NCBI GenBank assembly: GCA_965637545.1
Contig: OZ281501.1
Location: forward strand, 16,678,001 to 16,742,000
DNA length: 64,000 nucleotides
DNA from: Phallusia mammillata
Lineage: Eukaryota
Direction: 5' to 3'
In this document: one piece after another, positions 6,001 through 64,000 of the stretch
Layout: each line of letters opens with the position of its first letter
How positions within the stretch are numbered: the first letter of the stretch is position 1
Notes under the pieces: model-generated
Databases searched by the model: none
What the model was told of the DNA's origin: nothing
Seen by the model: only the letters and a program-made list of their open reading frames with translations
Program-made: the position numbers and the translations under genes

Positions 6001-9000
6001 GGGTCGATTTGAGTCAAGTTGTATGTCACTTCCATTCGAGTATCACAGGAGCCGCAGTCTTTCGGCGGAGGACAGATCGCATCGAGTTGTGTTCCGTTGA
6101 AACATCTTACGCTGTCGTCCCGTTTCTTTTCATTACTAAGCACGCATGTATAGTTCTGATTACAACCACTGTTGTCTAACTCTGACCATATGTCGCTTTC
6201 AAGATGTAAACCATCGTTGCCATCCTGACAAGAGTTACAAACACAACCTGAAGTAATAGGGTCATGACAACCGCAACTGTCCTTCATATTGTTGTATATA
6301 TAACCGGTAGGACACGTTGATTCGACTATTGTGTCATTGCATTTGCTTTCGCAATTGTATACAGGACAACACGGTCCGTAGGAAGATATCTCTTTTGATG
6401 CCACTGGAACGTTGCAGAACCCACAGTTCAGTAAAGCGTTACTGTAACTGGGGCACGCAAGTTTTAGAAGCTCGGTGTTATCTGTGCAGTTGCATTCCAG
6501 ACAGGGACATTCTTCAGTGGTGTTGCAACCTTGGACGACTTTTTCGCCAGGATAAGAGCAAAAGACCGTGTCAGGTTCGTCGCATGCTGCATGGAAAAAA
6601 ATATTTGCCAGTTCCTGTTTTAACGTTTAAATCATTAACAAACAGCAATTTGATAATGGTGGAATAAGTCAAAGATGCCTACTGTATGATGATTAAAATA
6701 GAATAGTAAAACATACCGGCGAATAAATCGCATGACTATTAAATGTTTACAGACCAGCTGTGAGGAACAGTTACTTTGCTAAATGCATGTAATGCAGTAA
6801 TGTCTGAAACGACATAGGATATTCATTTACTACTTAGGTTTTGGAAATTTACAAATAAATTGCAAAGCGCTTACTGCATATGTATTCTTGACAGCATACG
6901 CCCGATCTATCAACCGGCATTGCGTACGACCCGGTCCGGTTACAATATTTATCCTCATACTGTTGCTGGGTCAAACACGTTGTTGCCTCTTCATACTCTG
7001 TCCTCAACTCATGACATGAATACTCGTCACCGATTCGTGTGTGTAAGCAACGAACACGAATGTCACAGTGATCGATTTGGTTCTTCAAAGTAACGTTTTC
7101 ACCCGGATTAAACCTTCGAACTTCACCGTTAAAAGTACCCTGACAGGTATAACAAATACACTTCCAGTCCTTGCAACAATCAGTAGGTTCGCTCATGTCA
7201 ACAGCTTCATAATGGGGAGGACATTCTGGCCTTGTTTGGGTGTAGCAACGGTCACAATCACATGACCATGTAGGGCAACATGGATTTGGGCCAGTTCCAG
7301 GGGCGTCATGAATTTTGACCACAGAGCGGTCATCTCTTGAAGAGCAGTTTGCCTCAGCTTCAGAGTAACTCTCACATTCAGTTTCAAGAACGGAAATTTC
7401 TGTGTCGCATTCGCAAACAGGTTTTTTAAAGCATCGGGAATCAGGATTATCGACTGAGTCGCTGTACTGGCCAGGATTGTTACATTCCTTGGGTTGAGGA
7501 GCGAAGGATGCATTGCAATCTAAACACACATAAAATTATAATATTTAAAACAGCCATGCATTTGAGAATCGGTAAAAACACTTCTGCAAGGATAAAACTT
7601 AAATTGTTGTGAGAAGAAAGTTTTGATGGAAACAACTAGCCAACATCACATTAAAAATATTTCAAATTCGTAAAGAATAATATTGTTACATAACATCATA
7701 AATGTGGCTTGCATGATATTTTCTGGGTGAGTTTTATCATGCAAACACCCCGAAAATCCATTTCAGCACAAATTGAACAGCGTGTGTCATCTAATACTTA
7801 CTGCAGGTGTAGTTAACACAGCATGTATTTCCTGAAGGAGATTCTATCAGATATTCATCAGCAAAGCAATCATCAAACTCTTCTTTAGTAGGGCAATCAT
7901 CTCGTGTATTGTGTGTGGTTCGTACAACACCACATGAGTTGGTATGTCGCTCAGGACCGCACACGTAATGCACAACACACCCATCTTCCACCTCTTGCCA
8001 CAATGAACCAAACTAAAAAGTCGAAATAATACGGTTATTTTGCTTTAACGTCCGATTAACAACATTTAATCTTAAGCCAAAATTACAAAAGTCTCTGTTT
8101 TGGTTTGGTTAACCGTACCAAAGCTCAATTAAGTCTGGTTAATAAATGTAACCAGTTCTGTACATTTGCTGAAGATACTGTTTTTCACTGTCTACTCATT
8201 TTGTTTGATTTTTACTTTTGTTGATTTTAAACGACTGTTTTTGAAATTTCTTTCGGAGGTTTTCTTATATAACATAGTTGCCCACGAATGATTTACAGCC
8301 ACCGACCTTCTAAATCAAGGGGATAGTTTGTGTTTTACCTTGAACAGGTTTATCTAAAAGTGACTGTTTTCTACAGATTTTAATTTAATACGTTTGTTTT
8401 TTATACTTATTCTTCCACTTACCGGTTTAACGGTTCCGTCAGGTAGGAAACAGTCGTAACACACCGAAGTGTTACAGCAATTCTCTTCAACCAAAACGTA
8501 GCCTTCTTTTTCTTCAACAGGCGGGCAGGGAATTATTGAAGGTTCGTAACATCCGTCTTCAAGTGGTAAGGGTTTATTTATAATATCGCACTCATAATTT
8601 GTGCAACCATTGCCATCACTATTCGTCTCATTCCATTTGCCGATAAAAGGCCAATGGCGATTTCCAGTGTTATCCTTACAGGAGTAACATGTGCAGAATT
8701 GGTAAGTACAACCACATTCATCATCGTCATAAGCGGGAACAAATCCGTGCGGGCAATCGAATGTTTCAATTTCTGGGCAGAATTCTTTTGGTATGCAAAT
8801 GCAGTCATAATTTGGACAGCATTGGCCTTCCACATGTTCGATAGTGATTTCCTTCATGGAATTGTTCTGGCACTTTTCCCATGCTGTTTGATATCCAGGA
8901 CAAACGTTTTTGTATTCTTCAGAATCGTTTAAGCAAACGCAGTCATAAATTGGACAACACTGGCCTTCTACATGTCTAATAGTGAATTCCTTGATGGAAG

Positions 9001-12000
9001 TGTTCTTGCACTTGTCCCATTTCTCTTGATATCCAGGACAAACGTTTTTGTATTCTTCAGTATCATTTAAGCAAACGCATTTGGAATGAGCGCACACAGA
9101 ACCTTCAGGAGGAACAACGATAGACTTCCAACTACGAGAACATTCGATCGGAGGTGGTACATAGTCGGAATTGCAAACTGCAAAATGTTTTTAAAATGTT
9201 ATGAAAACTTTACAAAACGAGCCCGGATTACGAGAAAACACTCACTCACATACATATATATATAAGTGATAAATGCGGAAAATATTACATCGACTTTTTG
9301 TCGTGTTTACACGTATGTGTTTGATAGTTTTAACATTTTGTACTAAAGTTAGGCAGAAATAAATACACAAATTCGTCCTTGCAACTTAGGAATAACATTA
9401 ATATAAAATGCGACAAAAAGACCCACCACACGTGTAGTTTGAGCAACACGGGTCGGTTGAATCAACTTCAATTAATGTTTGATCTTCTTTGCATTTGTAT
9501 TCTGTACAATTGCTTCTTGGATTGTAAAATTCCTCAAGTATGTAACAGAAGTCTGGGCTTGTGTATTTTTTATCTGAACAAACGTGCTTCACCATACATC
9601 CACCTTCGTCGGGAATCGAAATAATACCGCCACGCTGAACAATAAAAACACCACCGATTATCACTGGTGAAAACGGTAACTTTTTTGTTTTACCGCCTTG
9701 AAGGCGATTTTTTAACAAGACCTAATGGAAGGCATTTTAATGTGGGTGACGCAAAAACAAATGTAATTTGTGTTTTCAAAAAGTACTATTCAATCACATA
9801 TCAAATAGTTTAAGGGGTATGTCTTCCTTGGCTCTCAAAACCTACCAAACTAATCTTTATTGCTGGTTATACTGGTTATCGATGTATCTACTATTTAAAA
9901 GTAAACGCTGGGTTGCGTTGGTTTCAAAAACCTTTTTGAGCTTTAATTAAGTGTTTAATCAAAAGGCACTTCATTATTACTTATGGCAAAAACAAGCGTT
10001 TCTGGCAGGGCATATCGTACCTCAATCTTCTCTTCCTCCCAGAAGCATGCGTCACATGTCACATTAGCACAACACATATTGTTGTCCCAAACCAGTTTGT
10101 AGCCATCAGGAACGCTGGTTACGTTGTAGTCCGGATCACAAGGTGTTGTCACACACTGGTATACATTACAGCAGCCGTGGCACTGGTCGTGAATCGATTT
10201 CGAGCCGTTTGCGACGGTGGTGTAATGCTGACACTTGCCACACTTCGGCGGTTCAGGACAGAGGTTAGGATTACATTTGCACTCGCTCTGTATTGGGCAT
10301 GCACAAAAGTCCTGCTGGGTTACTGTAAAAACGAAAGCAATGGTTATAAATTATAAATAATGTTTACTGTACTATTATTGGTCATAGGTGATGGGTGAAA
10401 AATGCAACAACAGAACTGGGTTTACACAAGCAAACAGACCCTTTGCATCATTTTTAATTTTATAACCGCAACTTGAACATAACTAACCACACACCTTCAA
10501 CATGGCATCCAAGGTACTCCGTGCAGTTTGCATAGCTGTGGTCTGTATGGTTGCAGCCGTCAGGACAGATACAATCCGGGCACTCTACTCCTTCCATGTA
10601 CACAAGAAATTCTTCGGGACAATATTTGATGTCGGTGTAGATGCAAGTGCAGTTTTCTTCGGGACAGCATGTTTCGTTTGGTCTCGTGTAGTTGTTTTTG
10701 GTTCCAAGTCCCCCACAAATCAGTGGAGTACAGGAATCACACTCTAAAGCATAAAAAAACAAGGACAAATCCTGGTAAAATATGCTTAAACAAAAATAGT
10801 TGTATTAAAAACAATAAAACGGCAACATAATATACTTACAAAAAACAAAACGTTTCAAGTAAAACAGTGGGTTAAGTGATATGCAAACGTGCAATTAGTG
10901 TAAAATTCAACTAAATGCAAAATAGGGTAAAAGTAACCTTGTCATATGTTTTTAATCTTATTACATGTAAAAACACTTACCGCATGTGTAATCTTGACAA
11001 CATTTGCCGGTGCTATCCTTTTCTACTGCGTAAGATCCCTCCAGGTAACAGTGCTGTTTCTCAAACTCCTGCTTAGTCAGACACGTCGCTTCCTCTCGAT
11101 ATTCTGTTTCTATCTCGAAGCACGAATACCCGTCGTTTCTGAGTCGTGTGTGCAAGCAACGAACTCGTACGTCGCAGTTATTGCTTCGGCTCGTCAAAGT
11201 AACGTTTTCACCCGGATTAAGCCTATGAACTTCACCGTTAAAAGTCGTCTGACATGTATAGCAAACACACTTCCAGTCCTTGCAGCAATCAGAAGGTTTG
11301 CTCATATCAACAGCTTCATAATGGGGAGGACATTCTGGTCTTTCTTGGTTGGAGCAAGTGTCACACTCACATGACCATGTAGGGCAACATGGGTTTGGGC
11401 CAGATCCAGGGGCGTCATGAATTTTGGACACAGAGCGGTCATCTCTTGAAGAGCAGTTTGCCTCAGCTTCAGAGTAACTCTCACATTCAGTTTGAAGTAC
11501 TAAAATTTCTGTGTCGCATACGCAAACAGGTTCTTCGTAACATTTGTAGTTAGGAATCTTAACTGTATCGTTGTACTGGCCTGGAGCGTTGCATTCGATG
11601 GGTTGAGGGGCAAGGGATGCGTTGCAACCTTAAAAGTACAAAAAAATGCGTATGACCATATTGTGTCACGCTGACAAGTATAATTTAAAGAGTTTCTCCA
11701 AAATCTGATTACTAAAAATGTGAGTGTTGATATGTATAAAAACTACTGTAAAAAATAATTTTTGAAAATGCTGGAGAATGTGCACCAAAAAACTTTAGCT
11801 GGTATTCGAAAGTAATAAGTTAGTTTTCCAGTCACTTACTGCAAGTGTAGTTAACACAACATGTATTCCCTGAAGGAGATTCTTCAAGATATTCATCAGC
11901 ATAGCAGTCATCAAACTCTTCTTTAGTAGGGCAATCGTCTCGTGTATTGTGTGTGGTTCGTACAACACCACATGAGTTGGTATGTCGCTCAGGGCCACAC

Positions 12001-41828: not shown

Positions 41829-42476
41829 TCATGGGACCGCTATATTCGCTGAAAAATCTGGAAGTTGATTCGACTCGGGAAGTTGACTGGATCTTGCGGC
41901 TGTGGCGTCACATTCAACTTCGGCACAGTCACAATCAATCACTTCAGCGTAGTTGTGAGTTCGCGGAACATTGTCCACACATACCATGGGATATTCTCTT
42001 GGTATTGTAGTGGTCTCCTTGCAACATTTGCAATTGCCTTAATAAAAATATCGGTGTTAGATGCAGCAGCCAATTTAAAATTGTGTGCAAACGAGCGGAC
42101 ATAAAAAGTGGCAAAATGTAACATTAGTTTAAGGTGACGTTTGTACCTAAAGGCGTTTCTGTCTTGTTGTATAATTCGCTTAAACATAATATGGAAGGAA
42201 GTAAATCGGTAACACACCACAAAGTCTGCGTTTAATATTTTTGTTTTTTTATCCGATGCTGTGTACTTTACACTTTCTGATTTCAAATCAAGGTAGTTTT
42301 TCTCGAACATTTCTTACCTTCCACGTCGCCGGTAAGCACGTTGTGACCTCGTATTGTAGTACAAGGGCCCTCGCAAACCGTCACCTCAACTTCATTCGGT
42401 GTCCAACAGAACTGACCTTCCAGGGTTGCGCTCAAAACAAAGGTCTTCACTCTTTTACTGCATTTATCATGGGTGC
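41829..42476 (-). CDS. Gene B CTCK domain and stop
   Basis: Nearly identical to gene A CTCK; the last motif reads CDC instead of CGC. TGA at 41829-41831. Confidence 0.9.
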
Positions 42477-45400
42477 CTAAAATATAGAAAAATCTATTGT
42501 TAGTATTCAGTGGTTGTCAGTGTTCAGCGGTTGTTAGTGTTCAGTGGTAGAAATGCCAACAATTCTGTCATATAAAAATGCTTACGATTTACCTAAATTG
42601 CTAGTTATAAAATGCATTGGAAAGTAATGCTATTACTATACAAAATTACAACCTGTCAAAAGTTTAAGTCATTTAAAATTTATCTTATTATATGCGGCAA
42701 TGATAACGAGCAACTAGGTATTTATGATGTTTTGACCCTCGGTGTAGTACAACGTTCAATTGCGCTAGTAATACACACGTATCCATATATGATAGTAGAA
42801 CAAACAGCTTTTCAAGCAAGATTTTTACAATGCCTTTGTCTGCTTGATACAAGCATTGCATCTAACGATTAGTCTAATAAGAAAATACTTACAATTAGGA
42901 CAGCAGTCCACGATCTTAACCTCTCCTCCGTCCTGAAAAAAAGGTAAATGAGAGAACTATTCACATTGTTACCTTTCAACTCCATGCATTATGTAATTTG
43001 TTTTCAACCTTTTTGGAGCAGTTAGATGGGTCTCTTGATTATGAGCTTAATTTTTAGATAGGCTTTTAGGTTACAAGGCTGAACTTACCAGCTCGCAAAG
43101 GGTTTTATTGACGGGTTTGCAGTCATCGTACTTGTCTTTTTTAATAACTGCAGGGCAATTGGTCGCCTCGTCAATGACACACTCTGCAACCTTACAACTA
43201 TCATTTTGCAATGCGAATGTCGTATTGGGCTGCAAAAGCAAACATTAGTTAAGTACACAAATTTGCGTAACACATTTTTTACCAAATGTTACTTACGGGA
43301 AAGACGCCGTTTTCATGAACGCACTTTTCACAGGAGCATTCGTATTTAGGACAGCAAATACCTTTCAGTGGGTTTCTCTCTACAACCTTAAAAACAAAGA
43401 CAAACAACATTACAATTTTGACATGAAATAAATGTATTGCTTATTAGTCTTAAAAAATCGTATGGACAACATGCTAACCTAGGAATTTCTCTAGCGTTAC
43501 ATTTAAATCCGTTTTGATAACCCAAAGCTTACCGTAACTCGGCGGGATCCTGTAGGACAAGTAAAAGTAGTGTCCCACTGTTCGCACAACGTTTCAAGTT
43601 CCGTATCGTCTCGGCAAACACATTCTTTTTTGGGACAGCAGTCATGAGTGCCAGGCAGACCACCAGCAGTTATTTCTTCCGTCAACGCGCTGCAGGTCAA
43701 TGTGTAATTGGGACAGATTGTCTCAAGAACATCCACACTATTGCATTCGCAAACAAAATCGTCGCAACAGCGATCTACATCAACGGAGCTCGCGACAGCA
43801 AGTTCGTACTGCAGACAGTTTTTGTTTTCATACTCGGATTGGGACAGACAACTATCTCTGGGGTCTCTTGTCTTGACGGCTACGTGGCATGATTGCAGGT
43901 CGGATTCGTTCAGTCGCATTGAGCTGCATTCCCAAGTTACATTGCAGCCGTTGAGTACAGTCTCGGTCCAAGTATCGTGAAGGTTTTTCACCTCACCATT
44001 CTCTAACTCACAAACGTCACACCTGCAAACGTATTTGTTGCAGCACCCGTTTGTGGCCGGATCCTTTTCAGCCAGTTCGACTGGGAAGTGATTTTCAGGG
44101 CATTCTGGAACAGGGGTAACAGCCGTTGCATTGCAGACTATTTTATGTGTCGGACAGCATTCTTGTCGAGGGTTTTCTGCTACTGTAGACAAAGTGTACA
44201 TCTCACATGCATTGGGTATATCATCTGGATATTCTTTGTCATCGTCCCCACAAGGGCTGCAAGTGCAGTTGTATTCTACACAACACGGCTGCGGAATACC
44301 ACCAAATAGCTCCACGGCATGTTCGTAGTCTTTGCACACTTCACTTTCATATTGGTCTTTTGTAGTACATGTTTCCCGGTTTATTTCTTGAAGTTCTAAG
44401 CACAGTGAGCATGCATCGTCGGAAGCCGTCAATCTGTTGTTGGAGCACAAATGCGTTCTTGTACATCCGTATTCGTCAGGAATTTTGATGTTTGAACCCC
44501 GGGTTATGCGAGTGCCGTTTTGTAATGCACAACTGTCGCAACAGCACGTTTGTAAGGGACACGTATCATTAGGCTTGCGTATGTCTATAATTTTGTAGCC
44601 ATCATCACAATTGTCCACAGTTCCTCCTCTGCATTCGCATTTGTACTCAGGGCAGCATTCGTATTCACCACTGCTTTCACCCGCGTTCACTACTATGGTG
44701 CTTCTTAAACCTGTGCAGTTCTCTGCTACCTGTTTATAGCCTGGACATTCAGCTGCAAGCACTGCCGTTTCATCACTACAAATACACTGATAGCAGGTGT
44801 TTTCTCCGTTTGTAAAAGGGGCCGAAATTTTACCAGGCTCGTTGCACTCTAGTGGTGTAGATGAATATTCCGGCTCTTTGCATACTGTAAAAACAACGAA
44901 ATACGTTTAAAATAGCATGTGCCTTGTACAAAGCGGTATGATATTTGTCTGCGAATAAAATCTACAAACAAAACCACGTAGCAAAGTTTTACTAAAATTC
45001 ATGTTATTTTTAAATTTCTACACTGCGATTACTAATATGTCAAATTCGTGCATGAATGTCTATTTCGCATGTTGGCATCTGCCTCCTGACTCTAATTATA
45101 TCTGATGCCGGACCAAAAAAACGAACATATACATCAATGTCATCGGCTTTTTCGTTTATCCAGTTAACGCTTGTTTTACTTAATTATTTACCTTTAATCA
45201 GGTTTTTGTATAAGACTTACCACATCTGAAAGAGTCACAGCAGTCGGAAGGATTCGCTTTGTAACTTTCTACCTCTTCAAATGATTGGCAGTTTTGTGTC
45301 TGGTAGGTTGATGAAGACGGACACGTCGGTGGTTCTGAGTGAAAAATCCCCACATTAACAAAAGGATTACAAATTTTGTTTGTGTCCTAGTAGGTTAAAC

Positions 45401-48400
45401 TCACCGCAGTAATCTTCCACACAGCAAGGGTTCGGGTCGATTTGAGTCGCGTTGTAGGTTACTTCCATTCTAGTATCACAGGAGCCGCAGTCTTTCGGCG
45501 GAGGACAGATCGCCTCGAGTTGTGTTCCGTTGTAACATCGTTCGCTGTCTTCGCGTTGCTTTTCCTTACTAAGCACGCAGGTATAGTTCTGATTACAACC
45601 GCTGTTGTCTAACTCTGACCATATGTCGCTTTCAAGATGTAAACCACCGTTGCCATCCTGACAAGAGTTGCAAACGCAACCTGAAGCAATAGGATCATGA
45701 CAACCGCAACTGTCCCTCACATTGTTGTATATGTAACCGGTTGGACATGTTGTTTCGACTATTGTGTCATTGCATTTGCTTTCGCAATTGTATACAGGAC
45801 AACACGGTCCGTAGGAAGATATCTCTGTTGATGCTACAGGAACGTTGCAGTACCCACAGTTAAGTAAAGCATTACTGTAGCTGGGGCACTCTAGTTTAAG
45901 AAGCTCGGCGTTATCTGTGCAGTTGCATTCCAAACAGGGACATTCTTCAGTGGTGTTGCAACCTTGGACGACTTTTTCACCAGGATAAGAGCAAAAGACC
46001 ATGTCAGGTTCGTCGCATGCTACATGGAAAATATTTATCAGTGGTTGTTTTAACATTTAAATCGTTTACAAACAACAATTATTTAATGGTGAAATATAGT
46101 CAAAGATGCTTACTGCATGCTTACTAATAGAATAGTAAAACTTATCGACCAATAGTTCACACAACTATTAAATGTTTACACATCAGCTGTAAGGAACGGT
46201 TACTTTGCTAAACGCATGTAATGCAGTAATGTCTAAAACGGCATAGGGTACTCATTTACCAGTTAGGTCTTGGAAGGTTTACAAATAAATTGTAAAACAC
46301 TTACTGCATATGTATTCTTGACAGCATACGCCCGAACTATCAACCGGCATTGCATACGACCCTGTCCGGTGACAATGTTTATCCTGATACTGTTGCTGGG
46401 TCAAACACGTTGTTGCCTCTTCATGTTCTGTCCTCAACTCATGACACGAATACTCGTCACCGATTCGTGTCGGCAAGCAACGAACACGAATGGCACAGTG
46501 ACTTGTTTGATTTACCAAAGTCGCGTTTTGGTAAGGATGAAGGATGTAGTCTTGGTCGTTAAGCCTCGTTTGACATGTGCTGCATTCACATTTCCATTCT
46601 CTGCAGCAGTCAGTCGGTTCGCTGATGTCAATAAGTTCGTGAAACGGAGGACACACTGGCTTTGTTTTGTTGGAGCAAGGGTCACACTCACATGACCATG
46701 TAGGGCAACACGGGTTTGGGCCAGTTCCAGGGGCGTCCTGAATTTTGAACACAGAGCGGTCATCTCTTGAAGAGCAGTTTGCCTCAGCTTCAGAGTAACT
46801 TTCACATTCAGCTCGAAGAACTGAAATTTCTGTGTCGCATTTGCAAACAGGTTTTTCAAAGCATCGGGAGTCTGGATCATTGACTGTGTCGTTGTACTGG
46901 CCTGGAGCGTTGCATTTCAGAGGTTTAGGGGCATGCGACGCATTGCAAGCTAAAAACACAAAATTATAATATTTAAAACAGCCATGCATTTCAGAATCGT
47001 TAAAAATACTTGTGTAAGGATAAAACCTAAATCGTTGTGAGTAGAAAGTTTGTTGGAAATAATTAGCTAATATCACGTTTATAGAGCTCTTCTGGCAAGT
47101 GTTCTTATTCCGACGTTCCGACGTCCTACACATATTCCGACGTTCCGACGTCCTATGCCAGAAGTGCTCTATAAACTTGATATTATGCCTAGCAGCAAAA
47201 GCCAATATCACATTGAAAATATCTCAAATTTTTAAAGATTGATATTATTACATAACGTCCTTAATGAGGCTTGTTTGACACTTTTCTAGTTGTGTTTTTT
47301 AGGCAAATGCCCTGAAAATCCGTTCCAGCACAAATTGAACGGTGTATATCATTTAGTCACTTACTGCAGGTGTAGTTAACACAACATGTGTTCCCTGAAT
47401 CAGATTCTTCGAGATATTCATCAGCATAGCAATCATTAAACTCTTCTTTGGCAGGGCAATCATCTCGTGTATTGTGTGTGGTTCGTACAACACCACATGA
47501 GTTGGTATGTCGCTCAGGGCCACACTTGTAATGCACAACACACCCATCTTCCACCTCTTGCCAAGTTGTATTGAACTGAAAAGGTAAAACATCTTAATGT
47601 ATTTTTACCTAAAGTTGCGAATTGTGCCGAACTTAAACTTCGAAATAATACGGTTATTTTGCATTAAATTCCGATTAATACCCTTTAATCTTTGGCCAAA
47701 AAATACCAAAATCCTTATTTTGGTTTGGTAGACTAAAACTCAAGTAAATCAAGTTAACAAATGTAGCCAGTTCTATATATGTGCTGAAGATACTGTTTTG
47801 CACTGTCTACCCATTTTGTATGATTTTTTCTTTTGTTGATTTTAAACCACCGCTTTTAAAATTTAATTGGAGGTGATTTTATTTACCAAAGTTGATTGAT
47901 TGACAGCCACCGACCTTCTAAATTTTAATGAGATGATTCTTTGTTTTTCACTTTGAATAGATTCACTTAATAGTGAACTGTTTACTTCAGATTTGAACTT
48001 AATACGTTTTTTTCTTATACTAATTCTTGTTCATACCTCTTTCACAGTTCCGTCAGGTAGGAAACAGTCGTAACACACCGAAGTATTACAACAATTATCT
48101 TCAACCAAAACGTAGCCTTCTTTCTCTTCAACAGGCGAGCAGGGACGAATCGAAGGCTCGTAACACTTTTCGTTTACTTTCAAATGGATAGTTAGCCAAG
48201 GGTCACACACATAATTTGTGCATCCGCTGCCATCGCTGTTTGGTTCAGACCAAGTTTGGGTAAAGTTTCGATAATTGTCAAGGTTGTCCTTGCAGGCGAT
48301 ACAGGTGCAGTATTCGCGATAACAACCACATTCATCTTTGTCCACGTAGGGTCCGTAATGCACTGGACATTCGGTTGTAATAACTTCTGGTGGGCATTCG

Positions 48401-51400
48401 TCCCTCCCGTCAAACGTTGTTCGTATTACGCCACAAGAATTTTCTGATCGCTCCGGTCCACACTCGTAATGTACTGGACATCCTCGATTGTCTTCTTGCC
48501 ACGTCGAGCCGTACTAAGTAAAAGTGATAACATATTTTTCTAATGCTACAGAAGATGGAAACAAAGATCGGCCCAACCTGTTAAGTCTAAACCGACGAGG
48601 CCGCAAACAACAAAACTAATTCCGGTTGTAATTTTTCAAACTAAAAGAAATATTTGAACCACTCTTTTAAAGCCGAACAAAACTATTTGGTTAAAACCAA
48701 CTGATGTGTAGCTTTTATGAAACAAGTTGATCTAATTCAAAATACTTATTTTAGGGCGCGCAAAAACAATAATCAGGAGCTTCATTAAATTGCAAAACTA
48801 AAAGTAATTGGCTTAGGTATGTATGCTTACCGCTATGACGCTTCCATTCTCGTGAAAGCAATCGTAACACACTGAAGTGTTACAACAATCCTTTTCAACC
48901 ACAATGAAGCCTTCTTTTTCTTCAACAGGCGAGCAGGGAAGAATCGAAGGTTTGAAGCACACGTCATTCGTTTTTAAATGGGCAGTTAGCCAAGGGTTAC
49001 ACTCATAGTTTGTGCATCCGCTGCCGTCGCTGTTTGATTCAGACCAAGTTTGAGTGAAATTTCGGTAATTGTCAAGGTTGTCCTTACAGGCGATACATGT
49101 GCAGTATTCGCGGTAACAACCACATTCATCTTTGTCCACGTAGGGTCCGTAATGCACTGGGCATTCGGTTGTAATAACTTCTAGTGGGCATTCGTCCCTC
49201 CCGTCAAACGTTTTTCGTATCATGCCACAAGAATCTTCTAATCGCTCCGGTCCGCACTCGTATTGTACTGGACATCCTCGATCGTCTTCTTGCCATGTCG
49301 TGCCGTACTAAGTAAAAGCAATAAAATATTTTTGTAATGCTACAGAAGATGGAAGCAAAGATCGGCGCAACCTGTCAAGTCTAAACCGACGAGGCCGCAA
49401 ACAACAAAAATAATTCCGGTTGTAATTTTTCAAACTAATAGAAATATTTGAACCACTGTTTTAAAGCCGAACAAAACTATTTGGTTAAAACCAACTGATG
49501 TGTAGCTTTTATGAAACAAGTTGATCTAATTCAAAATACTTATTTTAGGGCGCGCAAAAACAATAATCAGGAGCTTCATTAAATTGCAAAACTAAAAGTA
49601 ATTGGCTTAGGTATGTATGCTTACCGCTATGACGCTTCCATTCTCGTGAAAGCAATCGTAACACACTGAAGTGTTACAACAATCCTTTTCAATCACAATG
49701 AAGCCTTCTTTTTCTTCAACAGGCGAGCAGGGAAGAATCGAAGGTTTGAAGCACACGTCATTCGTTTTTAAATGGGCAGTTAGCCAAGGGTTACACTCAT
49801 AGTTTGTGCATCCGCTGCCGTCGCTGTTTGATTCAGACCAAGTTTGGGTGAAATTTCGGTAATTGTCAAGGTTGTCCTTACAGGCGATACATGTGCAGTA
49901 TTCGCGGTAACAACCACATTCATCTTTGTCCACGTAGGGTCCGTAATGCACTGGGCATTCGGTTGTAATAACTTCTAGTGGGCATTCGTCCTTCCCGTCA
50001 AACGTTTTTCGTATTACGCCACAGGAATTTTCTGATCGCTCCGGTCCACACTCGTAATGTACTGGACATCCTCGATCGTCTTCTTGCCATGTCGTGCCGT
50101 ACTAAGTAAAAGTGATAACATATTTTTGTAATGATACAGAAGATGGAAGTAAAAATCGGCGCAATCTGTTAAGTCTAAACCGACGAGGCCGCAAAAACCG
50201 AAAATACTACAGGTTGTAAATTTTTAAATGATTAGAAATATTTGAACCACTTTTTTAAAGTCGAACAAAACTATTTGGTTAAAACCAGCTAATGTGTAGC
50301 TTTGTTATGAAACAAGTTGATCTAATTCAAAATACTTATTTTAGGTCGCGCAAAAACAATTATCAGGAGCTTCATTAAATTGCAAAACTAAAAGTAATCG
50401 GCTTAGGTATGTATGCTTACCGCTATGACGCTTCCATTCTCGTGAAAACAATCGTAACACACTGAAGTATTACAGCAATTCTTTTCAACCACAATGAAGC
50501 CTTCTTTTTCTTCAACCGGTGAGCAGGGAAGAATCGTAGGTTCGTAACATTTTTCATCCGCTTTTGAACCATTTTCATTTAGTAGTTTCATTAGATCACA
50601 CACATAATTTGTGCATCCGCTGCTGTCGCTGTTTGGTTCAGACCAAGTTTGGGTAAAGTTTCGATAATTGCCGAAGTTGTCCATACAGGCCATACAAGTG
50701 CAGTTCTCGCGATCACAACCACATTCGTCTTTGTCCACGTAGGGGCTGTAATGTACTGGGCAATTGGCTGGAACGATTTCTAAGCTACACGGCGTTGTCA
50801 CACATTGATAGACGTTACAACAGCCATAGCATTGGTCGTGAACCGATTCAGAGCTGTTTGCGACGGTGACGAGATGCTGGCACTTGCCACACATTGGCGG
50901 CAGAGGGCAATTTGCAGGATTGCATTTGCATTCACTTTGTATTGCGCATCCACAGATGTCTTGTTTGGTCACTGCAGAGACAAAAAAAAATATGATTAAA
51001 AAATAAAAGCCAAATTTTGCTACCACAGTAAAAGTCGTTGGTGCACGAAATAAAATACGAAGTGAGTCATTTCGTTTGCGAAATACTACTATTGGATGTA
51101 GGCTATGGGTAAAAAAATGAACCTATATGTTAAGCAAAGGGTCTGTGCAAGCAAACATACCATTTGAATTTGTTAGGTCTACAGACAACTACAACTTTAA
51201 CAAAAATAAATAAAAAACAAACAAAAAAACACCTTCAACACGGCATCCAAGATATTCCGTGCAATTCGCATAGGTGTGTTCTGTATGGTTGCAACCTTTA
51301 GTACAGGGACAATCCGGACACTCAACTCCTTCAATGTACGCAAGAAGTTCTTCGGGACATTCATAGACGTCGTTGTAGATGCAATCACACCTTTCATCGG

Positions 51401-54400
51401 GACAGCATGCACCTGGTACGGGGTCGATTGTCTTGTTCCCAAGTGACCCACAATTCAACGAAGGACACTTCGGGCACGCTGTAATATAACAAAACATAAT
51501 GAAAACAATGGCATACAACTACGTGACTTACAGCCGCAGGCAAATTAGTTTTTAAGGCAGTGGTTCTCAATCACCAGGCCTCGGACCGGTGCCCGTCCGC
51601 GTCAACTTTCCTGCCGGTCCGCCAAATATATTACAATTTTATTTCTCATTTTAATTTTTTTTTTATCTCAAAGAACCGCGTTTAACACGTATGATATCAC
51701 ACAGACAGTAGCAAACTTCTCATTAAATTGAATTTTTCATACTTCTTTTAAATTGCATATTTTTGTCGTACTTGCGTGTTGGGCAGACTTTGCAAGCCCA
51801 CCGGTCCGCAAAATTTGTTTAAAAGTTTACCGGTCCGCAAACTTAAAAGGTTGAGAACCACTGTTTTAAAGCCAATGGCCTGTTTAGATGTAATGTTTAG
51901 GTTTAGTTTTTCTTTTTTGTCATATCTGTTTAAAACTGTTTTAAATTTAGAAAACGTTTTTTTTCTTCAAAAAACTTTGTAAAACTGTGTGCAAAATATT
52001 TAAATTCTTACTACACGTGTAGCTTTGACAGCATTCGTCAGTGCTATTAACTTCTTCTACGTACGACCCTTCCAAATGGCAGAATGCATCCTCATATTCT
52101 TGTTTGGACAGACAAGTAGTTTCCTGTTCGTATTCTGTCCTTAACTCATGACACGAATACTCGTCATTTCTGAGTCGTGTTGGTAAACAACGAACCCGTA
52201 CATCACAGTGATTGCTTTCTCTTTTGAATGTAGCGTTTTCACGAGGATTTAGTAAGTAGACTTTGTCGTCAATCATCGCCTGACAGGTATGACAAATACA
52301 CTTCCAGTCTCTGCAGCAGTCGGTTGGATCGCTAATATCAATAGCTTCATAATACATAGGACACTCTGGTCTTGTTTGGTTGTAGCAAGGGTCGCAATCA
52401 CATGACCATGTGGGGCAACATGGGTTTGGGCCAGTTTTAGGGGCATCATGAATTTTGAACACAGAGCGGTCATCTCTTGAAGAGCAGTTTGCCTCAGCTT
52501 CAGAGTAACTGTCACATTCGGCTCGAAGAACTGAAATTTCTGTGTCACATTCGCAAATATGTTTTTCAAAGCATCGGGAGTCAGGATCATTGACTGTGTC
52601 GTTGTACTGGCCAGGAGCGTTGCATTCGATTGGTTGAGGGGCAAGGGAATCATTGCAACCTTAAAGATGCACACAAAAATGAGTGTGGCCATATTGTTTC
52701 ACGCTGACAAGTATAATTTAAAGAGTTTAACCAAAAACTGATATCTAAAATTGTGTGGTTGTTGATATGTTTACAAAATAATGCAAAAAAATGTAAAAAA
52801 TATGGCGGAGAATGTGCACCAAAAGCCTTTAGCTGGTATTTGAAAATAATAAGTTCGTTTTTGCCACTTACTGCAGTTGTAGTTAACACAACATGTGTTC
52901 CCTGAAGGAGATTCTTCGAGATATTCATCAGCAAAGCAATCATCAAACTCTTCTTTAGTAGGGCAATCATCTCGTGTATTGTGCGTGGTTCGTACAACAC
53001 CACATGAGTTGGTGTGACGCTCAGGGCCACACTCGTAATGCACAACACACCCATCTTCCACCTCTTCCCACGTTGTGTCGAACTAAAAAGATGAAACATC
53101 TTAATGTATTTTCACCTAAAGTTGTGAATCTATGTTGACACACAAAATCTTGTTGTCTTTGCAATTTTAGTTGTCCTAGTTTTGAAATGATCGTAAATTC
53201 GGATGTTACATTTTTAATTTCTACATATAGCGCCATGATGGGGTAAAGAAAACAAGACGTTTGAACGTTGTTGTTTTTCCGGCAAAGCAAAAATGTGTTT
53301 TAACAAAAGACAGAACATCACCTCGCCTAAGAGGACAAACGTGGGTAACTTTTGTTGTTAATTTTTACTTACCGGTTTAACAGTTCCGTCAGGCAGGAAA
53401 CAGTCATTACACACTGAAGTGTTACAACAATTCTCTTCAACCAAAATGTAGCCTTCCTTTTCTTCAACAAGTGGACACGGAATTATCGAAGGTTCGAAAC
53501 ATTGATCGTGAGCTTTTGAATGGTGCTTACACTCATAATTTGTGCATCCACTCCCGCCACTGTCTGTCTCATTCCAACTTTCGTGGAGGTTGTGGGGGTT
53601 TCCAGTGTTATCAAAACATACACTGCAAAGGCACAGTCTTTCAGTACAATTGCATTCATTTGGGTATTCATATATATCGTAATGCTTCGGGCATTTTGCC
53701 GGTTCTTGGCATGCTTTGCAAACGCAGTCATAAATTGGACAACACTGTCCCTCCACCAGTGTGATAGTGAATTCCTGATTGGAATTGTTTTGACACTTTT
53801 CCCATGCCTCTTGATATCCATGACAAATGGTTTTGTATTGTTCAGAATCGTTGAGGCAAACGCATTTAGAATGAGCGCACACCGAACCTTCAGCGGGTAC
53901 AACGATTGATTTTTCACCAAGAAAACATTCTGCTTGAGATGGTATATAATCGGGGTTGCAACCTAAAAATAATACAAAATTTTAACTTCTCTGTTAACAA
54001 AACCTAACGGTTTGGACGTTACAAAAACGGAAAGCTTACAACATGTGTAGTTGGCACAACATTGATCACTTGATTCAACTTCACACAGTTTCTCGTCTTC
54101 TCTGCAGCTTGGCACAGTACATTCTTTGCAACCTTAAGAAATAAAATACAACCGATTTTCATCAGAACATTCCGATTTTTATCAGAATACGCCGATTTAT
54201 AACTTTGTTGTGTGAGGCGTTTTAATCCAACTTCGTAAGATAATAAAGTCTGCACCACATTGATATGCAGCATAGGTCTTTTCCAACATATAGTCGATTC
54301 CATTAGTACAGTTAAATGTATTCAAATAAAAATGAACAGGTTTTAACAGTGAGTCTTTACGCGTTTATTTAGGTGTTGTTATTTTGCTGACAAATATGTT

Positions 54401-60400: not shown

Positions 60401-63400
60401 ACCACATCTGCTTTCGATTTTACAGTCACACTCATGGTTGAATACTTCCGAACATCCAGGAGCATTGCACTCTTCTTCTTCCACACAATGAGAGTCATTG
60501 CCTGGACAAATACATTCCGCCTTCTTGCACGTTATGCCCCTTTCTGCTATCGCGGTAATGTTCCTGATCATCGGGTATTCACATTCCAGGCCTTCTGCAG
60601 CTTCTGGATCGTGCTCGGAATTACATTCTGTCAAAAACAATTATTTTAATGTTGTTTAATGGACAAGTCATATGTGCGGTCATCCTTCAAGCTAGGTTAT
60701 GTTAAGCACGACTCTTAGTGCTTAAGTTTTTAGATTCTTTTTAGGCATTTTTTGACCAGTAACATCTTTAACGCACAAAGTCAAAACAGAAAATACAAAA
60801 TGTATCCGGTAAGCTTGTCATCGTAAGTTACAAACCACTTGGAATATAACAACAATTTGTAGAGACTGAATTGTATCAAGGTTGTTCTAAGCTTAAAATA
60901 TCTCAACACTTCCCCAAGCTAATAGTTGCTAACCGGTGGAAAATTTCTCACCAGTGGGAATTTATGTACGGGGGGAGGGAAATAGTTTAAGTCATTGACA
61001 CTAAAATTGCACAAAAACATTGTTATAAAACTAACCGGGAGGAATTCGAATTTGGTGATTGGCTTTAGTGGAAAACTACACATAAATGATTAAGAACCAC
61101 TGCTCTAAGCCAAAAAACATTTTTTCCAAAAAACTATTTCTATCTTAACATTTTCTATAGCTTGTATTTGCACTTACTATGTGACCTAACTAAAACTGGT
61201 TACTCACGGCAGTTGAGTTTATCACAACATCCTCCATGTGTTGTTTCAACGCTCGGTCGCTTGTCAGTGAAAAAGGGGCAGATTTCATTTGGACAGTTGT
61301 AATCGGATGGCGAAGAGCTATAGCAGTCACCATCACTCACACAAGTGTAGTTTGTGCAATCGTGAATCCAGTTTTGTCCAGGTAACTGTATTGAATTTAA
61401 TAAGAAAGTCGGTGGAGAGACGCATGTAAAGAACAAACTAGGTTGTTAAATTTTATTCATATAACTCAAAAATATTACTGGAGACTTTAAAAGCTAAATA
61501 TACTGGGTGACCCCAGAACTCGTGATACTTTTACAGAAAAGTCTTGGAAAAAATGCTGAACTGCATGATACTTGCTTTAAGATTGACACTACTTATTTAG
61601 GCTATTACTTGAAAACTGTACACTTAAATCTCTTTACAACCGAAACAAATTCTAACCTTGGTTTCGTTGTTGAAAACGCAGTAACGACACTCACATTCAA
61701 ACGTTGGACAGCATTCGCCAGGTCGAGCTGGAACTTGAATCTGTAACAAATTAAACTGACTTGTAAAGCTGGAGTAAATCGTCAAGATGGCCGAGTGAAT
61801 TGGAGCAAACGTTCATGTTTACGAGGTTGAGGGATGTAATCGTGTCTTAGCCATTATGTTTCTCTAATCGATAAGGTTAAGGCAATGTTACTGCAAACCA
61901 TGAGAATAGGATGGTTTCAGTTTAAGTGAAGGCACTAACTATCAAATGCACGAAATGAAATACTAACTGATTTAACAAACTTGCATTAAAACTGGCAGTT
62001 TGACTCGGTTGAAAAGAAAAGTATAACGAGCATACAAAATGCTGAAAATTTTCAAAAACGTGCCAAACGCCTAGTAAAATGATTAATTATGGGTGTCACT
62101 CTCTATTCTGTTACCGTTCTCGCATAGGTTTCCACGTTATATATTATATATCACAAATTTGGAACTGTTAATTTCCAGGCCTAAATTAGTTATCTATCAT
62201 ATATACAGATTTCGTTTGTGCAAGCATCTTCAGTGTCTAAAAATACAACACAAACTTATAAAAACCAATAAAAGGTAGATGTTTCTAGGTATGTTACAGT
62301 GGCAAGCTTACTTTTTCTTCGTGTTGTTTGCATTCTACGTCGCTTCCGTCATCACACGGTAACAGCTCACATCTGAACTCGGGACAACAACTGTTGTTTA
62401 AGCATGATTCCGCACTTCCACTAATGCCACCACTGAATGTCGTAATGGCTTCGGAGCAATTGCCGCAATCCGGTGCGCCTTGGCATCTATTTAGGTCACA
62501 CCCTAAAACGTGTGTTTTAGTTAAGTATTTCCAATGTTCAGCTGATGTTACTGAAAGTAGTTGGTTTTAATTCTAGTACGTATAAAAGTCTGGTAACTGA
62601 TGTACATCATGTCAGGCTAAGGAAAAATTCACATACACTGGGTTAACCTAAGAAAGTTTCACATACAAACAATTGAAAAGATATGTCCTTCGCTTCTGGT
62701 GGCGTTTTTCGTACTTATTGTAATAACATTGTATGCCAACACTTAAACACTGTTTGAAAGGTGGCTGTGGCGTTAAGTAGTACATAATTAGCCGAAGTCG
62801 GATATAGATACATTTGGACTGTTTTTATAACGTTTAAGCTAGGTACTTACTACACGTGCTGTCAATAACGCAGCCACAGTCCATGTTCAGATCTTCGTGG
62901 CATCCATGAGTTGTGCAGTTGTTTCGTTCCACACAGTGACTTTCGTCAGTTGGACAAACGCACTCCGATTTCTGGCACGTCAACTCGTTAAAGTCGTAAT
63001 AGGTTGTGTTAAGCACTTTCGGGTGTTGACAAGTGACAGAGGCATCAAATGCAGGGTCGTATTCCGGTTTGCATTCTGTGTAAAAATACAAACAGTTTTG
63101 GTGTTGAGCTGTTGCAAGTTAAATGAATCGACATAATACGTTACCCTGCTGGTACAATTAAACATTAAACTAATAAATTTAAACAAAACAACACTTTCCT
63201 CGTACATATATTGTTTGGGAAACTTAACTTACCATAATGATGGTGACCTGAATAGGACATTGAAATGTTGGTATAAATAATACATTTACCAGAAATTTCC
63301 ACCGGTTAGCAACTATTTACCAAACCACTTGGAACGTATCAACAATTTTTCGAGGCTGAAATGTATCAAGGTTAACAATACTCCATGCCAATAGTTGCTT

Positions 63401-63829
63401 ACCGGTGGAAATTTCTCACCAGTGGGAAATTATAAATCGTCGGAGCGAAATAGTTTAAGTCAGTGACACCAAAATTGCACAAAAAAATGTCATAAAAATA
63501 GCCGGGAGGAATTCGAATTGGGTGATTGGCTTTAGTCGAAAAACTTCACCTAAAAGTTTAAGAACCACTGATCTAAGACAAAAATACATCAACATTTTCC
63601 ATAGCTTGTATTTGCAGTTTCTATGTGAGCTAACTAAAACCAGTTACTCACGGCAGTTGAGTTTATCACAACATCCTCCATGTGTTGTTTCAACGCTCGG
63701 TCGCTTGTCAGTGAAAAAGGGGCAGATTTCTTTTGGGCAGTTGTAATCGGCTGGCGAAGCGGTATAGCAGTCACCATCACTTACACAAGTGTAGTTTGTA
63801 CAATCGTGTATCCAGTTTTGTCCAGGTAA
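41829..63829 (-). CDS. Gene B: tandem paralog of gene A, 3' portion only (central Cys-rich modules, D4, stalk, CTCK); 5' part lies beyond the window
   Basis: Exon-by-exon homology to gene A with conserved lengths and phases: 41829-42037 (209), 42318-42476 (159), 43533-44884 (1352), 46305-46949 (645), 47365-47575 (211), 52012-52659 (648), 52872-53082 (211), 53373-53962 (590), 54675-54854 (180), 57062-57185 (124), 61208-61385 and 63652-63829 (178). No stops or frameshifts seen in the exons checked. Confidence 0.88.
47077..47176. mobile_element. Small fold-back insertion, gene B-specific
   Basis: Inverted ends GTTTATAGAGCTCTTCTGGCA / TGCCAGAAGTGCTCTATAAAC enclose two copies of ATTCCGACGTTCCGACGTCCTA. 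Absent at the gene A site ~7640. Confidence 0.6.
48037..50971 (-). repeat. Gene B-specific tandem array of ~795-bp exon+intron units (three 477-nt phase 0-0 exons plus a 551-nt related exon)
   Basis: Exons 48037-48513, 48831-49307, 49625-50101 and 50421-50971. Donor-site spacing is 794, 794 and 796 bp. The introns are near-identical. Confidence 0.92.
51558..51863. mobile_element. hAT (Charlie-like) MITE, 306 bp, gene B-specific
   Basis: TIR CAGTGGTTCTCAA / TTGAGAACCACTG. Flanks TTTTAAGG / TTTTAAAG (7/8). Not seen in the homologous gene A intron 10744-10980. Confidence 0.85.
54675..57185 (-). CDS. Gene B D4 assembly with GDPH
   Basis: CYAFGDPHYITFDGQFYSF... plus the downstream VWD, C8-like and TIL exons, matching gene A. 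Confidence 0.85.
59560..59738. mobile_element. hAT-type MITE, 179 bp, gene B-specific
   Basis: Imperfect TIR CAGTGGTGGGATTCA / TGAATGTCACCGCTG. Perfect 8-bp TSD CATATAAT. Empty site CATATACT in gene A at ~18889. Confidence 0.88.
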
Positions 63830-64000
63830 CTGTATTGAATTCAATAAGAAAGTTGGTAGAGGGACGCATGTGAAGAACAAACTACGTTGCTGAATTTTAT
63901 TCAAATAACTCAAAAATATTACTGGAGACTTAAAGAGCTAAGTATACTGTTGGGTGACCCCAAAACTCGTGATACTTTTAAAGAAAGGTATTTTGTACAA

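What the first reader, a model, noticed from the sequence alone, without database searches (positions are those of the whole stretch)
48037..50101. Gene B-specific tandem array of a chimeric exon
Seen: three 477-nt phase 0-0 exons spaced ~795 bp apart. Each 5' half ([41 protein letters not shown]) matches the 211-nt exon type ([41 protein letters not shown]). Each 3' half (CPVHYGPYVDKDECGC...PCSPVEEKEG...[11 protein letters not shown]) matches the 3' half of the 590/755-nt exon type. No such fused exon exists in gene A. The leftmost unit ends in FLPDGTVKE (A-like), while the others end in FHENGSVIA. Inference: a new exon was built by intra-exonic recombination and then amplified by unequal crossing-over. 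Symmetric phase would also allow skipping to tune protein length.
Basis: partly seen in the sequence, partly recalled or inferred. Interest (0 to 1): 0.7.

Follow-up and report, generated by a model that had tools for sequence, protein, structure and literature searches.

The report
Tandem composite exons in VWF-like gene
One of two neighbouring sea-squirt genes for a von Willebrand factor/mucin-like protein carries three tandem copies of a 477-base composite exon, a real but fairly ordinary case of a cysteine-rich repeat protein lengthening by unequal recombination.

Summary
Three open 477-nt exons, phase 0-0 with GT-AG sites, lie on the minus strand at 48037-48513, 48831-49307 and 49625-50101, with a period of 794 bp. 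The first 41 residues match the 211-nt exon type (61% identity, E 2e-19). The last 110 match the 3' part of the 755/590-nt exon type (55%, E 6e-40). This fused architecture occurs nowhere else in the 240-Mb assembly.

Three things were added:
- The array has about 3.4 units. The upstream exon (50421-50971) is itself a fusion and carries a fourth copy of the 3' module plus the array intron.
- Both junction types fall at the same cysteine codon, so recombination was in register between diverged modules.
- The units are coding. All 18 cysteines are conserved, and dN/dS is about 0.04 in the module core.

Synonymous sites between the 5' half and all four 211-nt exons are saturated. The 317-nt array intron resembles nothing else in the genome. 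The fusion is therefore old or its donor is lost; only the U2/U3 duplication (98% identity) is recent.

Reads could not be obtained, so copy number, expression and exon skipping are untested. This is a new member of a known kind.

The parts
47365..47575 (-). 211-nt exon (P-Q type) immediately downstream of the array in gene B; phase 0 start, phase 1 end
   Evidence: 89-95% identical over its first 123 nt to the three other 211-nt exons
47576..48036 (-). Gene A-like intron between U1 and the 211-nt exon; about 78% identical to gene A around 7995-8414
48037..48513 (-). U1, 3'-most 477-nt composite exon. P half is 48394-48513 and Y half is 48037-48393. The last ~90 nt are gene A-like.
48514..48830 (-). 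Array intron, copy 1 (317 nt); found only in this array
48831..49307 (-). U2, middle 477-nt composite exon; 97.9% identical to U3
49308..49624 (-). Array intron, copy 2 (317 nt); 96.8% identical to copy 1
49625..50101 (-). U3, 5'-most 477-nt composite exon
50102..50420 (-). Array intron, copy 3 (319 nt); 91% identical to copies 1 and 2
50421..50971 (-). Exon c4 (551 nt, phase 1 to 0), a second fusion. The 5' part (50787-50971) corresponds to the 5' part of the gene A exon 10021-10322. The 3' part (50421-50786) is a fourth copy of module Y.
8423..9177 (-). Gene A 755-nt exon; its 3' third is the counterpart of module Y
7802..8012 (-). Gene A 211-nt exon; its first 41 codons are the counterpart of module P

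Best explanation
The array is a real, gene B-specific tandem array of a 794-bp unit made of one exon and one intron. It sits in the cysteine-rich stalk of a VWD/C8/TIL (von Willebrand factor / gel-forming-mucin-like) gene of a sea squirt. In the direction of transcription it reads X'-Y | intron' | P-Y | intron' | P-Y | intron' | P-Y | gene A-like intron | P-Q.

Inferred history:
1. An old tandem duplication of the stretch [Y, intron, P]. Its ends lay at equivalent cysteine codons of two diverged modules, and this created the P-Y exon.
2. Unequal crossing-over then changed the copy number. The U2/U3 pair is the most recent product.
3. Gene conversion kept the Y cores alike.
4. An in-register deletion joined X' to the first Y, giving exon c4.

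Each unit adds 159 residues with 18 cysteines (apparently two disulphide-rich modules) and 2-3 N-glycosylation sequons. This segment of gene B is about 210 codons longer than its gene A counterpart. The rearranged centre no longer exchanges sequence with gene A.

Shown: the structure, the homologies, the coding constraint and the uniqueness in the genome. Inferred: the order of events, and that all three exons are spliced into the mRNA.
For: Period and copies. Open frames, splice sites and phases. Homology of the two halves. Both junctions lie at the same Cys codon (TGC/TGT followed by CCA or AGC). All 18 Cys are conserved. Between U1 and U2/U3, exon nt 124-300 has 9-10 synonymous against 2 non-synonymous changes (omega 0.04-0.05, P about 1e-5). 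Identity is mosaic: U1 is 91-100% like U3 over its first ~300 nt, then 72-88%, while its last ~90 nt are 88-95% like gene A. The edge copies (c4, U1) are more diverged than the inner pair. dS between genes A and B is 0.15-0.40 in ten other exon pairs, but 1.2 for X' and 0.76-0.99 for Y. Gene context: VWD, C8 and TIL hits. Unequal crossing-over with homogenisation is the established mechanism for domain-repeat indels (PMC5100051). Sea squirts hold many multi-VWD genes (PMC4948705).
Against: There is no read, transcript or cross-species evidence. The array intron has no detectable relative, so its derivation from the ancestral 755-to-211 intron is assumed, not shown. The 5' half is saturated at synonymous sites against every 211-nt exon, so its donor cannot be named. 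U2 and U3 differ at only 20 of 794 positions. A falsely duplicated haplotype cannot be excluded from the sequence alone. In the P half, dN/dS is 0.55-0.82 on very few changes, so constraint is not shown there.
Confidence: 0.7

Rival explanations
1. The P-Y exon architecture is ancestral to both paralogues. Gene A lost or replaced it, so it is not an innovation of gene B.
For: The P half is anciently diverged from the 211-nt exons. Local divergence between genes A and B is dS about 1. The array intron is an orphan.
Against: The unfused arrangement, an X-Y exon followed by an intron and a P-Q exon, occurs twice in gene A and once more in gene B at 53373-53981 / 52872-53082. It is therefore the common type. 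Gene A holds no remnant of a P-Y exon.
Confidence: 0.15
2. Part of the array is an assembly artefact. U2 and U3 would be two haplotypes of one unit laid in tandem, or the true array is longer and was collapsed.
For: U2 and U3 with their introns are 97.5% identical. From general knowledge, ascidian genomes are highly heterozygous.
Against: The 20 differences are clustered in one 261-nt stretch, with only 2 in the remaining 533 nt. This is a conversion-like mosaic rather than evenly spread allelic differences. c4 and U1 are clearly distinct copies with unique flanks, so at least a 2.4-unit array is certain. The window has no N and the assembly has no second copy of the locus.
Confidence: 0.1
3. 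The three exons are used as alternatives, either mutually exclusive or as cassettes, so the mature protein carries fewer than three units.
For: All three have equal length, and the symmetric phase 0-0 keeps any subset in frame. From general knowledge, tandem duplicated exons are a common source of alternative exons.
Against: No docking/selector complementarity between the array introns and the flanking introns beyond 14-nt AT-rich chance matches. The intron fold is no better than shuffles (z 0.6). The 317-nt introns are too long for steric exclusion. All donors and acceptors look equally good.
Confidence: 0.12
4. The units are decaying pseudo-exons that are not spliced into the mRNA.
For: No transcript evidence is available. 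Exon and intron divergence between U2 and U3 are similar, at 2.1% and 3.2%.
Against: There is a strong excess of synonymous change in the module core, all 18 cysteines are kept, and no stop, frameshift or lost splice site occurs in any unit.
Confidence: 0.05

Closest known systems
Intragenic tandem amplification of exon-plus-intron units encoding disulphide-rich modules (e.g. the kringle IV-2 repeat of human LPA; the haptoglobin Hp2 duplication). Recalled from general knowledge, not tested here.
   Same: A DNA-level tandem repeat includes the intron. The frame is symmetric, so copy number changes protein length in frame. Unequal crossing-over is the driver, and the inner copies are the most alike.
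   Different: In those cases the unit ends lie in introns and whole exons are copied. Here the unit ends lie inside exons at equivalent cysteine codons, so the repeated exon is a composite found nowhere else. There are only three full copies, and polymorphism is unknown.
Concerted evolution and indel turnover of protein domain repeats in Metazoa (PMC5100051)
   Same: Unequal crossing-over plus homogenisation keeps repeats of one protein alike and changes their number.
   Different: That work treats domain-level repeats in general. Here the exact junctions, an orphan intron and a boundary to between-paralogue homogenisation can be read from one locus.
Multi-VWD proteins of sea squirts and gel-forming mucins / VWF (PMC4948705)
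   Same: VWD, C8 and TIL domains lie upstream, followed by a cysteine-rich C-terminal part ending in a knot-like exon. The genes are tandem paralogues.
   Different: There is no PTS region in the window. Length variation sits in cysteine-rich modules rather than in a PTS repeat. The modules do not reach any Pfam or PDB sequence threshold.
Tandem exon duplication giving mutually exclusive exons. Recalled from general knowledge.
   Same: Adjacent paralogous exons have identical length and phase.
   Different: The exon length is a multiple of three, so inclusion of all copies stays in frame. No competing RNA pairing was found, and usage is unknown.

Membership tests
Tandem exon-plus-intron duplication array (product of unequal crossing-over) | Two or more adjacent exons of the same length and phase with significant similarity | tested here: met
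   Three 477-nt phase 0-0 exons, 87-98% identical
Tandem exon-plus-intron duplication array (product of unequal crossing-over) | The non-coding spacer is repeated with the exon at a constant period | tested here: met
   Period 794, 794, 805 bp; introns 91-97% identical
Tandem exon-plus-intron duplication array (product of unequal crossing-over) | The array is present in the reads or in other individuals, so it is not an assembly artefact | not testable with these tools
Tandem exon-plus-intron duplication array (product of unequal crossing-over) | The copies are spliced into the mRNA | not testable with these tools
   No RNA data. Indirect support only: omega 0.04-0.05 in the core and intact splice sites
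Composite (fused) exon from two parental exon types | Each half is significantly similar to a different exon type that stands alone elsewhere | tested here: met
   E 2e-19 for residues 1-41 and E 6e-40 for residues 49-158. The parental types are separate exons in both genes
Composite (fused) exon from two parental exon types | The junction can be localised | tested here: met
   P homology ends and Y homology starts at the Cys-Pro codons TGC CCA. Both parental types share TGCCC there
Composite (fused) exon from two parental exon types | Recent origin from the extant neighbouring exons and intron | tested here: not met
   Synonymous sites of P against the 211-nt exons are saturated. The array intron is unrelated to the gene A-like intron
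VWC domain (Pfam PF00093) | Match to the family profile | tested here: not met
   No Pfam hit even at E up to 10. A profile of 15 modules finds no PDB chain at E up to 10
VWC domain (Pfam PF00093) | VWC-like fold | tested here: inconclusive
   The AF2 model of one module has pLDDT 66. The best Foldseek rows are a NEL VWC chain, FnI modules and VWF C4, all at E 0.3-1.6. Language-model neighbours are VWC clusters at 0.81, below the lead threshold
VWF / gel-forming-mucin-like gene (VWD-C8-TIL ... C-terminal knot) | VWD, C8 and TIL domains | tested here: met
   Pfam hits above the gathering score in upstream exons of gene A, plus TIL in both genes
VWF / gel-forming-mucin-like gene (VWD-C8-TIL ... 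C-terminal knot) | C-terminal cystine knot | tested here: inconclusive
   The terminal exons 2434-2640 and 41832-42038 have a knot-like Cys pattern but no Pfam hit as single exons
Mutually exclusive exon cluster with competing RNA pairing | A docking site complementary to a selector in each unit | tested here: not met
   Only 14-nt AT-rich matches; intron fold z 0.6

The most novel reading that the evidence does not exclude
The array would be a copy-number-variable cassette that does, in a mucin-like protein without a PTS region, what PTS repeats do in mucins. Individuals, or splice isoforms that skip symmetric units, would make polymers with stalks differing in steps of 159 residues and 18 cysteines. 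The structural difference would also have shut off sequence exchange with the sister gene, letting the two paralogues diverge in function from the centre outwards.
Probability: 0.2. Interest if true: 0.5.

Novelty: new member of a known kind. Interest (0 to 1): 0.33.

Why it matters
The locus records how a long cysteine-rich stalk grows. Recombination in register between diverged modules makes a composite exon, unequal crossing-over then multiplies it, and conversion keeps the copies alike. It also shows a sharp boundary between a zone that two tandem paralogues still homogenise (dS 0.15-0.4) and a rearranged core that has escaped (dS about 1). That helps gene annotation in this genome, because the exons have no database relatives and are easy to miss. 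It may also be a usable marker for copy-number variation. It does not change what is known about how such repeats evolve.

Tried and rejected
- Relatives: phmmer of one unit against 1.84 billion representatives gave 0 hits. No cross-species polarity test was therefore possible, and the word-index search would have added nothing.
- Pfam on single exons gave nothing.
- A PDB sequence profile of 15 modules gave nothing.
- AF2 of the whole exon gave pLDDT 45, which is unusable. AF2 of one module gave pLDDT 66, with only weak fold matches.
- Origin of the array intron: sensitive blastn against the window, a whole-genome DNA search and Smith-Waterman scores against eight neighbouring introns with shuffles all gave no similarity, z at most 1.
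- I considered whether the P half is the counterpart of the gene A exon at about 9427-9721. This was rejected, as there is no alignment at E up to 100.
- Competing RNA structures and known RNA families gave nothing.
- The bacterial promoter/terminator scan is irrelevant here.
- The spliced, joined protein model was not searched or folded.
Full report
**Setting.** The window is G000:C8:16678001-16742000 of a 240-Mb assembly. I did not verify the species. A self-comparison shows two tandem paralogues on the minus strand: gene A at about 850-22500 and beyond, and gene B from about 40200 to the window end. They are 76-91% identical over most of their length. Upstream exons of gene A give Pfam VWD, C8 and TIL hits above the gathering score, and both genes have a TIL exon. 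These are therefore VWF / gel-forming-mucin-like genes. Sea squirts are reported to hold many such genes (PMC4948705). The part of interest is the long cysteine-rich stalk.

**Observation.** There are three composite exons: U1 48037-48513, U2 48831-49307 and U3 49625-50101.
- Each is 477 nt and translates without stops to 159 residues.
- A frame set on strict 795-bp spacing fails for the middle unit. The true period is 794 bp.
- Each exon is preceded by ...TTACTTAG and followed by GTAAGC (U2, U3) or GTATGA (U1).
- Residues 1-41 align without gaps to the first 41 residues of the 211-nt exon type (25/41 identical, E 2e-19).
- Residues 49-158 align to the 3' part of gene A's 755-nt exon (60/110 identical, E 6e-40).
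- In a six-frame search of the whole assembly, only these three places match over the full length. All partial matches lie in this window: the 755/590-nt exons for the 3' half and the four 211-nt exons for the 5' half.
- U1 ends like gene A, and U2/U3 end differently.

- The next exon upstream, c4 (50421-50971, 551 nt, phase 1 to 0), is also a fusion. Its 5' part matches the 5' part of the gene A exon 10021-10322. Its 3' part is a fourth copy of the same module, Y, followed by a third copy of the array intron.
- The array therefore reads X'-Y, i', P-Y, i', P-Y, i', P-Y, then a gene A-like intron and the ordinary 211-nt exon 47365-47575.
- The X'|Y and P|Y junctions fall at the same cysteine codon to within one codon. 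At P|Y both parental exon types share TGCCC.
- The cysteine spacing after the junction (C-x8-C-x12-CxC-x4-C) resembles what follows the same Cys-Pro in the 211-nt exon (C-x8-C-x14-CC-x4-C). The swap thus looks to be in register between paralogous modules. This is my reading of the pattern, not a test.

**Are the units coding?**
- All 18 cysteines are at identical positions in the three units.
- Between U1 and U2/U3, exon positions 124-300 carry 9-10 synonymous and 2 non-synonymous differences (omega 0.04-0.05, P about 1e-5).
- Over the whole Y module, c4 against the units gives omega 0.27-0.34 (P below 0.002).
- In the P half the changes are too few to tell (omega 0.55-0.82).
- I conclude that at least the lineages leading to U1, to U2/U3 and to c4 were kept as coding sequence after they split.

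**History.** Identity is mosaic.
- U2 and U3 differ at 10 exon and 10 intron positions. Eighteen of the 20 lie in one 261-nt stretch.
- U1 is 91-100% like U3 over its first ~300 nt and 72-88% thereafter. Its last ~90 nt and its downstream intron are 88-95% and about 78% like gene A.
- c4 shares the U2/U3-type exon end and intron.
- Diverged edge copies, a near-identical inner pair and patchy tracts are what unequal crossing-over with conversion produces (PMC5100051).
- Synonymous divergence between genes A and B is 0.15-0.40 in ten exon pairs. It is 1.2 for X' and 0.76-0.99 for Y. The rearranged centre has therefore escaped the exchange that keeps the rest of the two genes alike.

- The P half is not a recent copy of any present 211-nt exon. 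Nucleotide identity is 57-65%, and 21-25 of about 27 synonymous sites differ. The four 211-nt exons are 89-95% identical among themselves.
- The 317-nt array intron has no detectable relative. None was found in the window by sensitive blastn or in the assembly. None was found by local alignment against eight neighbouring introns, where z was at most 1 against 160 for the positive control.
- Two readings remain, and I cannot separate them without an outgroup. Either the founding duplication is old enough (dS about 1 or more) for the intron to have diverged beyond recognition while conversion kept the Y cores alike, or the block "exon end + intron + P" came from a cassette that no longer exists.
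- The gene A exon at about 9427-9721 is not the counterpart of P.
- The most economical path needs two junction-forming events plus copy-number changes: a tandem duplication of [Y, intron, P], expansion, and an in-register deletion from X' to the first Y.
- With the exon limits read, this segment is 1982 nt in gene B against 1352 nt in gene A, about 210 codons more. The acceptor of the gene A exon at 9721 is my inference.

**What the unit encodes.**
- No Pfam family matches any of these exons, even at E up to 10.
- phmmer finds no relative among 1.84 billion representatives.
- A profile of 15 modules finds no PDB chain.
- A language-model search puts VWC clusters nearest at 0.81, which is only a lead.
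- AF2 of the whole exon is unusable (pLDDT 45). AF2 of one 79-residue module reaches pLDDT 66. Its best Foldseek rows are a NEL VWC chain, fibronectin type I modules and VWF C4, at E 0.3-1.6.
- "VWC-like" is therefore plausible but not established. I do not file the modules as VWC.
- Each unit also carries N-x-T/S sequons (NFT, NTS, and NGS at the end of U2/U3), read directly.

**Usage.** Symmetric phase means any subset of units stays in frame. I found no complementary docking/selector pairs, no unusual intron folding and no Rfam match. Nothing points to regulated choice among the units. Constitutive inclusion is the default expectation, but it is untested.

**Not done.**
- The joined, spliced protein was not searched or folded. 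Exons were handled singly by reference.

**Verdict.** This is a real and well-defined gene B-specific array of a composite exon, explained by known mechanisms. It is a clean example rather than a surprise.

Noticed in passing
window 50421-50971 (-): The exon upstream of the array is itself a fusion. The 5' part of the gene A exon type 10021-10322 is joined at a cysteine codon to a fourth copy of module Y. Relative to gene A, gene B lacks the rest of that exon, the exon at about 9427-9721 and the 5' two thirds of the 755-nt exon.
   Followed up: yes
window 8795-9079 (-), inside the gene A 755-nt exon: An in-exon tandem duplication of 138 bp (2.1 copies, 87% matches) encodes a 46-residue cysteine motif. 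It accounts for most of the size difference between the 755-nt and 590-nt exon types.
   Followed up: partly
window 1500-22500 versus 40900-64000: Divergence between the two paralogues is very uneven. Identity ranges from 76% to 91% by block, and dS is 0.15-0.40 in most exons but about 1 in the two exons that border the rearrangement. This suggests ongoing gene conversion that stops at the structural difference.
   Followed up: partly
window 7802-8012, 11840-12050, 47365-47575, 52872-53082 (-): The four 211-nt exons are 89-95% identical across both genes and both positions. In three of them about 40 nt of the upstream intron is also alike. This indicates concerted evolution of this exon type.
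   Followed up: partly
window 48514-48830, 49308-49624, 50102-50420: The array intron is an orphan sequence. It has no similarity to any other intron of either gene or to anything else in the 240-Mb assembly, and no Rfam match.
   Followed up: yes
window 60831-61545 versus 63321-63992, and 19965-20640: A further exon-plus-intron cassette is duplicated in gene B's upstream stalk at 84-87% identity. Other first-stage notes cover it.
   Followed up: no
window 3099-3150 and 42497-42548: The same 17-bp tandem repeat (3.1 copies) is conserved in the 3' regions of both paralogues.
   Followed up: no
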